A stretch of 64,000 nt of DNA from Diadema antillarum (taxonomy: Eukaryota). Below the pieces are notes generated by a model that did no database searches, was not told the DNA's origin, and saw nothing but the letters and a program-made list of their open reading frames with translations. Made by a program: the position numbers and the translations under genes. The stretch is from positions 2,914,001 to 2,978,000 of the forward strand of contig NW_027271020.1 of NCBI RefSeq assembly GCF_040938485.1, in the 5' to 3' direction. Shown in pieces: positions 36,388 through 39,639 of this stretch; the stretch's first letter is position 1; every line of letters starts with the position of its first letter.

Positions 36388-39300
36388 CCCTAACAAAAAA
36401 GTCCTGTGGTACTCCCTGTGGTACTTGTCGGTACCACACAATGTACCACACACTTGTAATGTTACCACAGGAACTGTGTGGTACTGTACCACAGGCTTGT
36501 AGGGTACTCCCTGTAGTACTTGTCAGTACCACACAATGTACCACATAAATAAATGTTACCACAGGAACTGTGTGGTACTGTTTTACAGGCTCATGTGGTA
36601 CTCCCTGTGGTACTGGTTGGTACCACACAATGTACCACACAAATATATGTTAACACAGGAACTGTGTGGTACTGTGTCACAGGCTCGTGTGGTACTCTGG
36701 GATGTACCACAGGGCAGTACCACAGGACATTACCACAGGAAAGTACCACAGGACAGTACCACAAGACAGTATACACACGAATTGTCCTGTGGTATTTTGG
36801 GACGTATACCACACGACAGTACCACAGGACAGTACCGCATGAATTGTCCTGTGGTATTTTGGGACGTAACACAGGAGAGTACAACAGGAAAGTACCACAG
36901 GATAGTACCACAGGACAGTACCGCATGAATTGTCCTGTGGTATTTTAGGACGAACCACAGGACAGTACCACAGGGCAGTTCCACAGGACAGTACCACAGG
37001 GCAGTTCCACAGGACAGTACCACAGGAAAGTACCACAGGACAGTACCACAGGAATTGTCCTGTGGTATTTTGGGACATACCACAGGACAGTACCACAGGA
37101 CAGTACCACAGGATAGTACCACAGGACAGTACCTCACGACTTGTCCTGTGGTATTTTGGGACGTACCACAGGACAGTACCACAGGGCAGTACCACAGAGC
37201 AGTACCACAGGACAGTACCACAGGAAGGTACCACAGGATGGTACCACAGGACAGTACCACACGACTTGTCCTGTGGTATTTTGGGACGTACCACAGGGCA
37301 ATACCACAGGACAGTACCACAGGACAGTACCACACGACTTGTCCTGTGGTATTTTGGGACGTACCACAGGATAGTACCACAGGGCAGTACCACAGGAAAG
37401 TACCACAGGATAGTACCACAGGACAGTACCACAGACTTGTCCTGTGGTATTTTGGGACATACCACAGGACAGTACCACAGGAATTGTCCTGTGGTATTTT
37501 GGGACGTACCACAGGACAGTACCACAGGACAGTGCCACAGGATATTACCGCAGGACAGTACCTCACGACTTGTCCTGTGGTATTTTGGGACGTACCACAG
37601 GACAGTACCACAGGACAGTACCACAGGATAGTACCACAGGACAGTACCACACGACTTGTCCTGTGGTATTTTGGGACGTACCACAGGGCAGTACCACAGG
37701 ACAGTACCACAGGATAGTACCACAGGACAGTACCACAGACTTGTCCTGTGGTATTTTGGGACATACCACAGGACAGTACCACAGGAATTGTCCTGTGGTA
37801 TTTTGGGACGTACCACAGGACAGTACCACAGGACAGTGCCACAGGATATTACCGCAGGACAGTACCTCACGACTTGTCCTGTGGTATTTTGGGACGTACC
37901 ACAGGACAGTACCACAGGACAGTACCACAGGATAGTACCACAGGACAGTACCACACGACTTGTCCTGTGGTATTTTGGGACGTACCACAGGGCAGTACCA
38001 CAGGACAGTACCACAGGATAGTACCACAGGACAGTACCACACGACTTGTCCTGTGGTATTTTGGGACATACCACAGGACAGTGCCACAGGAATTGTCCTG
38101 TGGTATTTTGGGACGTACCACAGTACAGTACCACAGGGATGAACCACAGGACAGTACTACAGGATAGTACCACAGGAGTGTACCACACGACTTGTCCTGT
38201 GGTATTTTGGGACGTACCACAGGACAGTACCACAGGGCAGTACCACAGGACAGTACCACAGGAGAGTACCACAGGATAGTACCACAGGACAGTACCACAT
38301 GACTTGTCCTGTGGTATTTTGGGACGTACCACAGGACAGTACGACAGGAATCCCTGTGGAATTTTGGGACGTACCACAGGACAGTACGACAGGAATTCCT
38401 GTGGTATATTTTGATGTATACCACAGGAGAGTACCACAGGAACTGTCCTATTAAATCCCACAGGAAAATCATAATATGGTGCTATTCCACACGGAAGTAC
38501 CACACAGCAAATTAAATTCGTAAGTACCACAGAAAAAAGCTACAGGATATTCTTTTTTTTTTTCTTAACATTTTATACCAGAGGACTATGACATCAGGAG
38601 AATATCAAACAGCAGTACCACACAGGAGTACCACACAGGAAAATTGTAAGGCAGAATCTACTGAAATTCATTACAAAAATACAAACAGAAAAGCACATAT
38701 TAATATTTCTCAGTTAATTGATAGATGAGTTATGCTGTGAATTATAGCAATTGATTTGCCATTACTTATCCTGTCCTATACTCCTACAGTATTACCTATT
38801 TAGTGAAAGTGCTGATGTAAAGCATGAGAAATTTCATAAGGACTTCTGTGGTACGGTACTCCTGTGGTACTCCTGTGGTACTCCTGTGGTACAAACTTTT
38901 ACATAGCTCATGAATATTCATAAAAAGCACTCTAGATTTTAGAAAATACATATATGACTTAAAAAGTCAAAGTATTAATGATGGAACTTACTTTGAACTG
39001 TATGAAAGATTGTCTACTACCTAGGAATAGAATATGACTATATAGATCTATTATAGGACTAGATTGGCACTTGGCCATTAGACTCTCGTTTGAGGTTATA
39101 TGTTAGGAGTAGGACAGGTTATTAACTAGGGCCATGTTTGTACTGATATCCATCACTCATCTATCAGGAATATTCCTTGATATGTGACTAAAATTCTCCC
39201 AGATTTTTTTTTCGAAATGCTGTGTGGTACTGCCCTGTGGTAATGCTGTGTGGTAATGATCGACCTGTGGTACTGTCCTGTGGTACTGTCCCAAAATACC

Positions 39301-39639
39301 ACAGGACAGTTCCTGTGGTACTGTTCTGTGGTACTAGTCCTGTGGTACTGCCCTGTGGTACGTCCCAAAATACCACAGGAATTCCTGTTGTACTGTCCTG
39401 TGGTACTGTTCTGTGGTACCGGTCCTGTGGTACTTTCCTGTGGTACTGCCCTGTGGTACGTCCCAAAATACCACAGGAATTCCTGTGGTACTGTCCTGTG
39501 GTATGTCCCAAAATACCACAGGACAATTCCTGTGGTACTGTCCTGTGGTACTTTCCTGTGGTACTGTCCTGTGGTACTGTCCTGTGGTACAGTCCTGTGG
39601 TAATTACCACAGGAGTACCACAGGACTTTTTCGTAAGGG
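36388..39639. mobile_element. Non-autonomous CACTA/EnSpm-like element, 3252 bp, dominated by a 13-bp minisatellite
   Basis: About 35-bp TIRs CCCTAACAAAAAAGTCCTGTGGTACTCC / reverse complement CCCTTACGAAAAAGTCCTGTGGTACTCC. 2-bp TSD AT (36386-36387, 39640-39641). Subterminal GTACCACAGGACA repeats in both orientations. Paralogs C1 and C3 show the empty site. No transposase. Confidence 0.85.
36700..38460 (+). repeat. Higher-order minisatellite (13-bp GTACCACAGGACA units punctuated by an inverted-unit module)
   Basis: Runs of 2-5 monomers are separated by CTTGTCCTGTGGTATTTTGGGAC. Near-exact 304-bp duplication (37444 vs 37748). An oppositely oriented array lies at about 39230-39600. Confidence 0.95.

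What the first reader, a model, noticed from the sequence alone, without database searches (positions are those of the whole stretch)
36388..39639. A CACTA-like transposon in gene C2 is pre-equipped to be spliced out as a new in-frame intron
Seen: on the gene's sense (minus) strand, 32 nt into the element lies TGT G|GTAATT (intron start 39607, phase 1). The far end reads ACTTTTTTGTTAG|GG ATA ACC (acceptor at 36390, also phase 1). Joining them removes 3218 nt and gives ...LGLYG-IPYEKVLWYSCG-ITPMVML..., a 415-aa protein with only 12 extra residues in a predicted loop after the IIILRK helix. The two mismatches between the first 14 nt of the TIRs (sense TTTTTTGTTAG versus TTTTTCGTAAG) both favour the acceptor at the needed end, and both gene halves have no disabling mutation. 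Established: maize Ds and dSpm elements can be spliced from transcripts, and introner transposons create introns. Inference: this may be de novo intron gain in an intronless coding region, caught early.
Basis: partly seen in the sequence, partly recalled or inferred. Interest (0 to 1): 0.9.

Follow-up and report, generated by a model that had tools for sequence, protein, structure and literature searches.

The report
Young transposon splitting an intronless gene
One of the two gene copies of a sea-urchin membrane-transporter gene carries a recent 3.25-kb transposon insertion in its single coding exon; the sequence would allow the transposon to be spliced out in frame, but nothing available here shows that this happens, so for now it is an ordinary insertion allele that would be easy to test.

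Summary
Window 36388-39639 is a non-autonomous DNA transposon: 25-nt terminal inverted repeats (23/25 matching), a 2-bp AT target duplication, and about 150 copies of a 13-nt unit in two inverted arms. It sits in the single coding exon of an SLC35G1-like (EamA) transporter gene of Diadema antillarum. A second contig of the same assembly carries the same gene uninterrupted (403 aa). The published assembly retains both haplotypes, so the insertion is most likely heterozygous in one animal. The GT at 39607 and the AG ending at 36390 exist. Joining them adds 36 nt (12 residues) and keeps the frame.

On a rough position-weight score the donor is weak (4.6 of 12.7 bits). It lies inside a very stable hairpin, and about 20 stronger donor-like sites lie downstream in the element. 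No junction peptide exists in 5.8 billion proteins. NCBI's RNA-seq-informed annotation has a protein for the empty allele and both neighbouring paralogues, but none for this allele. The termini (CCC...GGG) and the 2-bp duplication do not fit CACTA; the build is foldback-like. Spliceosome-independent "SOS splicing" of exonic transposons is a published rival route. Transposon-made introns are already reported in a sea urchin.

The parts
36388..39639 (-). Non-autonomous TIR transposon of 3252 nt, described in the gene's sense (minus strand). No ORF other than repeat read-through.
   Evidence: Boundaries come from the empty-site alignment. TIRs. Repeats. ORFs.
39615..39639 (-). Terminal inverted repeat at the gene-sense 5' end: CCCTTACGAAAAAGTCCTGTGGTAC
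36388..36412 (+). Terminal inverted repeat at the gene-sense 3' end: CCCTAACAAAAAAGTCCTGTGGTAC. It matches its partner at 23 of 25 positions.
39640..39641 (-). Target-site duplication AT, upstream copy
36386..36387 (-). Target-site duplication AT, downstream copy
39640..40421 (-). Gene C2, 5' part: codons 1-260 plus 2 nt. It holds the first EamA domain and the first helix of the second.
   Evidence: Pfam EamA, E = 1.5e-20. 96% identical to XP_071499532.1.
35956..36387 (-). Gene C2, 3' part through the stop codon: the rest of the second EamA domain.
   Evidence: Pfam EamA, E = 1e-8..
39311..39602 (-). Short arm: about 22 copies of the 13-nt unit (GTACCACAGGACA in gene sense)
36704..38303 (-). 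Long arm: about 130 copies of the same unit in the inverted orientation, organised as a 304-nt higher-order repeat x4.2
36405..36697 (-). 94-nt repeat x3.1 next to the 3' terminus
38560..39225 (-). A+T-rich middle domain without unit arrays (apart from a few units near 38850-38880) and without an ORF of 80 aa or more
39602..39610 (-). Proposed donor GTG|GTAATT; the intron would start at 39607
   Evidence: PWM score 4.6 bits against 12.7 for the consensus; rank 30 of 494 GT sites
39576..39626 (-). Local RNA hairpin that pairs the donor's G|GU
   Evidence: MFE -47.7 kcal/mol for the 111-nt stretch 39560-39670 that contains this hairpin, z = -5.7. Unpaired probability 0.00-0.06 for positions -3 to +2.
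36389..36403 (-). Proposed acceptor GACTTTTTTGTTAG|G; the exon would resume at 36389
   Evidence: PWM score 6.5 bits against 13.7 for the consensus; rank 9 of 238 AG sites
38992..39020 (-). 29-nt pseudo-exon flanked by the best acceptor-like (8.2 bits) and the best donor-like (8.1 bits) sites of the element

Best explanation
This is a young insertion allele, most likely heterozygous. A non-autonomous, foldback-style TIR transposon landed in the single coding exon of one member (C2) of a tandem family of SLC35G1-like transporter genes in Diadema antillarum.

Shown: the element, its termini and its 2-bp duplication; the intact gene halves; and the empty allele on the other haplotype contig.

Inferred: by default the allele is damaged. 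Read-through gives a 422-aa chimaera that stops inside the element. If the gene is transcribed, the element is probably removed from part of the RNA, but imprecisely and in several ways. One route is weak cryptic GT/AG sites, of which 39607/36390 is the best in-frame pair. The other is spliceosome-independent excision triggered by pairing of the inverted ends. The result would be a null or weak allele, sheltered by the intact allele and by close paralogues. It is not yet an intron.
For: Structure.

Same assembly, two contigs: L002 and L003 are 100% identical to the window and come from GCA_040938485.1 contig JBFRCO010000132.1. L001, which has the empty site and encodes XP_071499532.1 (403 aa), comes from contig JBFRCO010000025.1. 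L001 is collinear with window 26282-50293 at 94-98% identity.

Haplotypes: the assembly is 1.75 Gb against about 0.9 Gb haploid, with 84.4% duplicated BUSCOs, which the authors attribute to retained haplotypes (PMC13511894).

Youth: only 23 of 1212 coding differences separate the alleles (dS 0.039, dN/dS 0.34). On the element-bearing lineage there are 3 nonsynonymous and 5 synonymous derived changes, so there is no sign of decay.

Annotation: the two flanking paralogues of the window are on record as NCBI proteins, but no product exists for C2 on this contig.

Weak, structured donor and many decoys.

End pairing: the element ends can pair over about 55 nt, -77 kcal/mol.

Against: No RNA data could be consulted, so neither the damage nor the heterogeneous removal is shown.

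The GT...AG pair is canonical and always adds 36 nt wherever the element lands. The retained 34 nt are open in all three frames, and the insertion is in a short loop between two predicted helices. A functional 415-aa product is therefore possible.

Absence of a gene model is weak evidence: reads map ambiguously between haplotypes and paralogues.

The two contigs could be a segmental duplication rather than alleles. Local divergence of about 5% exceeds the genome-wide 2.52%.
Confidence: 0.6

Rival explanations
1. The spliceosome uses GTG|GTAATT (39607) and TTGTTAG|GG (36390) efficiently and removes 3218 nt. The allele then makes a working 415-aa transporter with a 12-residue loop insert, and so is a newborn intron.
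For: Both sites exist and are canonical, and the product is in frame with no stop. It is the best ORF-preserving pair near the ends. There is no AATAAA or ATTAAA on the sense strand inside the element. The insert falls in the short TM6-TM7 loop. Pairing of the ends could bring the two sites together. Introner transposons are reported in the sea urchin S. purpuratus (PMC12130899).
Against: The donor scores 4.6 of 12.7 bits and lacks the +5 G. Its G|GU is paired with probability of about 1 in a hairpin. About 20 stronger donor-like sites and a strong 29-nt pseudo-exon lie inside the element, and a much stronger acceptor (11.8 bits) lies at 36234 in the downstream exon. An out-of-frame pair (39788/36389) scores as well. 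No junction peptide and no gene model were found. Only one copy of the element was in reach, so 'pre-equipped' cannot be told apart from chance.
Confidence: 0.12
2. The element is removed from the mRNA mainly by SOS-type, spliceosome-independent excision. This is triggered by pairing of the inverted ends and sealed by RTCB, at several non-GU-AG positions in or near the terminal repeats. It would give a mixture of small insertions and deletions of which only part is in frame.
For: In C. elegans, Tc1, Tc3 and Tc4 in exons are excised from 90-100% of host mRNAs. In human cells Tc1 and HSMAR2 reporters are excised. Pairing of the terminal repeats is necessary and sufficient and does not depend on their sequence (PMC12779559). 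Here the ends pair over about 55 nt at -77 kcal/mol, and the arms are inverted arrays. A nematode and a human bracket the sea urchin phylogenetically (inference).
Against: This has never been shown in an echinoderm. The host factors (AKAP17A, CAAP1) were not looked for in Diadema. The perfect terminal repeat is only 25 nt against 54 nt in Tc1. The many internal inverted units may pair locally instead of end to end.
Confidence: 0.2
3. The two contigs are a true segmental duplication, and the element-bearing copy is a fixed, dead duplicate gene (a pseudogene in the making) and not an allele.
For: Local divergence is about 5-6% in intergenic DNA against 2.52% genome-wide heterozygosity (PMC13511894). 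The authors leave room for some real duplications. There is no gene model on this copy.
Against: Collinearity over at least 24 kb includes three paralogues in the same order. 84.4% of BUSCOs are duplicated, and two phased haplotypes of about 0.9 Gb were recovered. dS between the copies is only 0.039.
Confidence: 0.08

Closest known systems
Exonic Ds / dSpm (En/Spm) insertions of maize that are spliced out of the transcript through sites in the element ends (from my own knowledge, e.g. dSpm in A2 and bz; not looked up here)
   Same: A non-autonomous TIR element with subterminal repeats sits in a coding exon. Donor- and acceptor-like sites lie in or next to the termini, and a few element-derived codons would be left in the mRNA.
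   Different: Splicing is shown by cDNA in maize and is only predicted here. The termini are CCC...GGG with a 2-bp duplication, not CACTA with 3 bp. The host is an animal.
Introners: transposons that create introns on insertion (PMC9860276; PMC12130899, which reports them in Strongylocentrotus purpuratus)
   Same: A DNA transposon with terminal repeats and a target duplication sits in a coding exon of an aquatic animal, and a GT...AG pair would excise it.
   Different: Introners are defined by many near-identical copies that serve as validated introns in unrelated genes. Here there is one copy and no RNA evidence. At 3.25 kb it is far larger than typical introners, and 34 nt would stay in the mRNA.
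SOS splicing of Tc1/Tc3/Tc4/HSMAR2 from host mRNAs (PMC12779559)
   Same: An exonic DNA transposon whose inverted ends can base-pair. The expected outcome is imprecise removal with partial rescue. Such alleles are rare and apparently purged.
   Different: Not tested in echinoderms. The element family is unrelated, with shorter perfect terminal repeats and very repetitive arms.
Foldback transposons (Drosophila FB and Tetris; TU elements of S. purpuratus, Liebermann et al. 1983 as cited in PMC4079207)
   Same: Long inverted arms built from short tandem sub-repeats, a non-coding middle domain and no transposase.
   Different: Foldback elements studied so far mostly give 8-10-bp duplications (Mutator-like). 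This one gives 2 bp, and its arms are very unequal (about 0.4 kb against about 2.1 kb).
CMC (CACTA-Mirage-Chapaev) superfamily
   Same: A short target duplication and arrays of subterminal repeats.
   Different: The hallmark termini 5'-CAC...GTG-3' and the 3-4-bp duplication (PMC4079192) are not met. There is no transposase to place it.

Membership tests
CACTA / CMC transposons | Termini 5'-CAC(TA)...(TA)GTG-3' | tested here: not met
   Termini are CCCTTACG... / ...TGTTAGGG, fixed by the empty site. Hallmark as stated in PMC4079192.
CACTA / CMC transposons | 3-bp (Chapaev 3-4-bp) target-site duplication | tested here: not met
   The duplication is 2 bp, AT. A 2-bp duplication is what I recall for the Mirage branch, but I could not confirm that in the library.
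CACTA / CMC transposons | Multiple subterminal repeats | tested here: met
   About 22 and about 130 copies of a 13-nt unit in inverted arms
CACTA / CMC transposons | CMC-type DDE transposase, in the element or in an autonomous partner with the same ends | not testable with these tools
   No ORF other than repeat read-through. No eukaryotic genome DNA search was available. Pattern scans of metagenome and viral contigs found nothing.
Foldback-type elements (structural class) | Long inverted arms made of tandem sub-repeats around a non-coding middle domain | tested here: met
   Inverted arms up to 168 nt at 93% and 120 nt at 98% complementarity. Arrays. Middle domain 38560-39225.
piggyBac | CCC...GGG termini together with a TTAA target duplication | tested here: not met
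   The termini fit, but the target is GGC-AT-AACC and has no TTAA
Introner | Many similar copies that are annotated, RNA-supported introns in unrelated genes | not testable with these tools
   One copy in the window. Only two related ORFs were found elsewhere, and their DNA could not be retrieved.
Introner | Carries or co-opts functional splice sites so that the reading frame is restored | tested here: inconclusive
   An in-frame GT...AG pair is present but weak, structured and outcompeted on paper. No junction peptide was found.
SOS-splicing substrate | DNA transposon in an exon whose inverted terminal repeats can base-pair in the RNA | tested here: met
   Exonic position. End-to-end duplex of -77.4 kcal/mol.
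SOS-splicing substrate | AKAP17A/CAAP1/RTCB-dependent excision seen in RNA | not testable with these tools
   No RNA data, and the factors were not searched for in Diadema
SLC35G / EamA (drug-metabolite transporter) family (host gene) | Two EamA domains, about 10 transmembrane helices | tested here: met
   Pfam PF00892 in both halves. NCBI name of the empty allele. Weak match to SLC35B1 structures, E = 0.0035. Hydropathy.

The most novel reading that the evidence does not exclude
The element-bearing allele still works because the transposon is taken out of the mRNA in frame. This would happen either at the GT...AG pair, adding 12 residues to the TM6-TM7 loop, or by excision triggered by pairing of the terminal repeats. 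It would then be a segregating proto-intron in an intronless animal gene. Both the 'before' and 'after' alleles sit in one published assembly, so intron birth could be studied allele-specifically in a deuterostome.
Probability: 0.12. Interest if true: 0.7.

Novelty: new member of a known kind. Interest (0 to 1): 0.3.

Why it matters
Gene disruption by a transposon is routine, and transposon-made introns and RNA-level removal of exonic transposons are both published, the former already in a sea urchin.

What this locus offers is a clean natural test case. It is a single-exon gene with an exactly defined insertion, the empty allele is in the same animal, close paralogues serve as controls, and there are two competing and distinguishable predictions for the RNA: one GU-AG junction adding 36 nt, against scattered non-GU-AG junctions near the terminal repeats. 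A few RT-PCRs or a re-mapping of existing RNA-seq would decide between them. They would also show whether SOS-type excision operates in echinoderms.

Tried and rejected
- Junction-bearing proteins. I searched 5.8 billion proteins with the N-terminal half plus the 11 element-encoded residues and with an 85-aa piece meant to catch short transcript fragments. Only NCBI models of the empty allele and paralogues came back, and no fragment carried the junction.
- Exact look-up of the 422-aa read-through ORF: not in the collection.
- Other copies of the element. A profile-free search of 1.84 billion representatives with the 617-aa repeat ORF gave 38 weak hits. Only two of them (P0025, P0029, ENA sample ERZ26222911) carry the translated terminus, and their DNA could not be fetched. 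The rest are unrelated low-complexity repeats.
- Exact-pattern scans for the terminal repeat and for a double unit in metagenome contigs and viral contigs: nothing found.
- Earlier notes of this scan, searched by words and by sequence: nothing on this element.
- Rfam: no RNA family in 35800-40700.
- AlphaFold2 of the empty-allele protein with a 9-sequence alignment: mean pLDDT 38, too poor to use. I rely on hydropathy and on the weak SLC35B1 alignment for the loop.
- Alternative element boundaries or duplications (3-bp ATA, TA, 4-bp ATAA, Helitron-style A|T): rejected, because only the 2-bp AT register keeps the two terminal repeats aligned.
They rank sites only roughly. No MaxEnt-type or Diadema-trained model was available.
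Full report
**What is there.** Read on the minus strand, window 40421-35956 is one open reading frame for a two-domain EamA transporter, interrupted by 3254 extra bases. The extra DNA is a transposon.
- Its ends are a 25-nt inverted repeat, CCCTTACGAAAAAGTCCTGTGGTAC and CCCTAACAAAAAAGTCCTGTGGTAC. 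They match at 23 of 25 positions and are the only two matches in the window, against none in 100 shuffles.
- The 12-mer GTACCACAGGAC occurs 40 times exactly, only inside the element.
- Tandem Repeats Finder describes about 22 units of 13 nt in a short arm (39311-39602) and about 130 in a long, oppositely oriented arm (36704-38303). The long arm has a 304-nt higher-order period. A 94-nt x3.1 repeat lies next to one end.
- Arms are up to 98% complementary over 120 nt.
- The A+T-rich middle, about 38560-39225, has no ORF of 80 aa or more. All longer ORFs are read-through of the arrays.
- The element is therefore non-autonomous.

**Where it comes from.** The N-terminal half finds 'solute carrier family 35 member G1-like' proteins of Diadema.
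- Exact look-ups show that the two neighbouring paralogues of the window are NCBI proteins on contig JBFRCO010000132.1 of assembly GCA_040938485.1, Diadema antillarum.
- The fetched loci are 100% identical to the window.
- The window holds a tandem family of these single-exon genes: three close copies, two distant ones and two fragments.

**The empty site.** The best hit, XP_071499532.1 (403 aa), lies on another contig of the same assembly, JBFRCO010000025.1 (L001).
- L001 is collinear with window 26282-50293 at 94-98% identity.
- At the insertion point it reads GGCAT|AACCCC, whereas the window reads GGCAT[element]ATAACCCC.
- This fixes the element boundaries and a 2-bp AT duplication.
- It also shows that the Ile codon ATA at the site predates the insertion; the paralogues have ATG.
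- The paper describing this assembly states that it is 1.75 Gb against about 0.9 Gb per haplotype, with 84.4% duplicated BUSCOs, because both haplotypes were retained (PMC13511894; the preprint version).
- The insertion is therefore most likely heterozygous in the one sequenced male. A true segmental duplication is the less likely alternative.

**Age and constraint.** With the element and one AT removed, C2 translates to 403 aa without a stop.
- It differs from the empty allele at 23 of 1212 nt (dS 0.039, dN 0.013, ratio 0.34).
- Polarised with the two close paralogues, the element-bearing lineage has 8 derived changes (3 nonsynonymous, 5 synonymous) and the empty allele 11 (9 and 2).
- Nothing indicates decay after the insertion, so it is young.
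- The numbers are small, and gene conversion among paralogues could mislead the polarisation.

**The proposed intron.**
- The donor-like GTG|GTAATT starts at 39607, and the acceptor-like CTTTTTTGTTAG|GG ends at 36390.
- 3218 nt would be removed and 36 nt retained, giving 12 extra residues (IPYEKVLWYSCG) and a 415-aa product.
- Because 32 + 2 + 2 = 36, this pair would be in frame wherever the element lands in this orientation. The retained piece is open in all three frames.
- In the opposite orientation the corresponding sites would leave 25 or 37 nt, out of frame (sequence).
- The insert falls between predicted helices 233-253 and 264-283, in a loop of about ten residues. This rests on hydropathy and a weak alignment to human SLC35B1 structures. 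The AlphaFold model was too poor to use.

- The donor scores 4.6 bits (consensus 12.7) and ranks 30th of 494 GT sites on the sense strand.
- Thirteen GTG|GTACGT, four GTG|GTATGT and one AAA|GTAAGT inside the element score higher.
- The acceptor scores 6.5 bits (consensus 13.7) and ranks 9th of 238. An 11.8-bit acceptor lies at 36234 in the downstream exon.
- Among 12 donor/acceptor pairs within 150 nt of the element ends, 3 keep the frame.
- The strongest sites of the element flank a 29-nt pseudo-exon, 39020-38992.
- The donor lies at the tip of a near-perfect hairpin: -47.7 kcal/mol for 111 nt, z = -5.7. The probability of being unpaired is 0.00-0.06 for positions -3 to +2.
- The two element ends can form a duplex of about 55 nt at -77 kcal/mol, which would cover the polypyrimidine tract and the AG.
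- Of the two terminal-repeat mismatches, only T versus A at position -3 changes the acceptor score. With one copy, its direction is a coin toss.
- No AATAAA or ATTAAA lies on the sense strand within the element.

**Evidence about RNA.** None is positive.
- No protein with the junction exists among full-length or fragment-length candidates.
- NCBI's pipeline, which used RNA-seq, gives a protein for the empty allele and for both flanking paralogues on the window's contig. No called gene overlaps either half of C2 in the fetched loci.
- This is weak negative evidence only.

**Classification.** 'CACTA-like' does not hold up.
- CMC elements have CAC...GTG termini and, for Chapaev, 3-4-bp duplications (PMC4079192). 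Here the termini are CCC...GGG and the duplication is 2 bp.
- The CCC...GGG ends recall piggyBac, but the target has no TTAA.
- The architecture is that of a foldback element, a structural class known from Drosophila and from sea urchins and thought to arise in several superfamilies (PMC4079207).
- Two ORFs from an ENA sample end in the translated terminus of this element, so relatives exist, but their DNA was not retrievable.
- The superfamily remains open.

**Known biology.**
- Transposons that create introns (introners) are documented in 175 genomes (PMC9860276). More recently they were reported in the purple sea urchin, with RNA-seq validation (PMC12130899).
- Zhao et al. (PMC12779559) showed that exonic DNA transposons are excised from 90-100% of host mRNAs in C. 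elegans, and from reporters in human cells, by a spliceosome-independent system.
- That system is triggered solely by pairing of the inverted terminal repeats. It cuts at several, mostly non-GU-AG, positions near the repeats and leaves indels of which only some are in frame.
- The same authors note that recent exonic insertions are rare, which suggests that they are purged.
It also predicts that any rescue would be partial.

**Verdict.** The most likely state is a young, heterozygous, damaging or weakly functional insertion allele in a redundant gene family. My estimates are:
- about 0.6 for that reading;
- about 0.12 for efficient in-frame spliceosomal removal;
- about 0.2 for removal mainly by terminal-repeat-triggered excision;
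- about 0.08 for a fixed dead duplicate.
The concept is already known, so novelty is low. The value lies in how easily the locus can be tested.

Noticed in passing
window 11379-12410, 21579-22808, 24969-26171, 35956-40421, 49255-50445 (all minus strand); fragments at 33513-33943 and 46128-46450: A tandem family of single-exon SLC35G1-like (double EamA) transporter genes: three close copies (83-87% identity), two distant ones (about 35-50%) and two pseudogene-like fragments.
   Followed up: partly
window 26282-50293 versus L001 (GCA_040938485.1 contig JBFRCO010000025.1): The same assembly holds a second, collinear version of this region at 94-98% identity, most likely the other haplotype. Local divergence of about 5% is twice the published genome-wide 2.52%.
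   Followed up: partly
C2 coding sequence, window 35956-40421, versus L001:10001-11212: Polarised with paralogues, the uninterrupted allele carries 9 nonsynonymous and 2 synonymous derived changes, and the transposon-bearing allele 3 and 5. The intact copy looks the less constrained of the two, although numbers are small and gene conversion is possible.
   Followed up: partly
P0025 and P0029 (ENA sample ERZ26222911): Two ORFs from an unrelated public assembly are built from similar repeat peptides and end in ...TTG[IV]P[HQ]DIFVRD, the translation of this element's 3' terminus. Related elements therefore exist elsewhere, but the DNA could not be fetched.
   Followed up: partly
window 38992-39020 (minus strand): The best acceptor-like site (TATTCTATTCCTAG|G) and the best donor-like site (AAA|GTAAGT) of the whole element flank a 29-nt segment in its middle domain. 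This is a potential pseudo-exon that would shift the frame.
   Followed up: no
window 49255-50445 (minus strand) and L001:344-1042: The paralogue at 50 kb ends six codons early (397 aa) in both haplotypes. On the other haplotype NCBI models only a 232-aa product, although the frame is open over the whole stretch that was fetched.
   Followed up: partly
   Followed up: no
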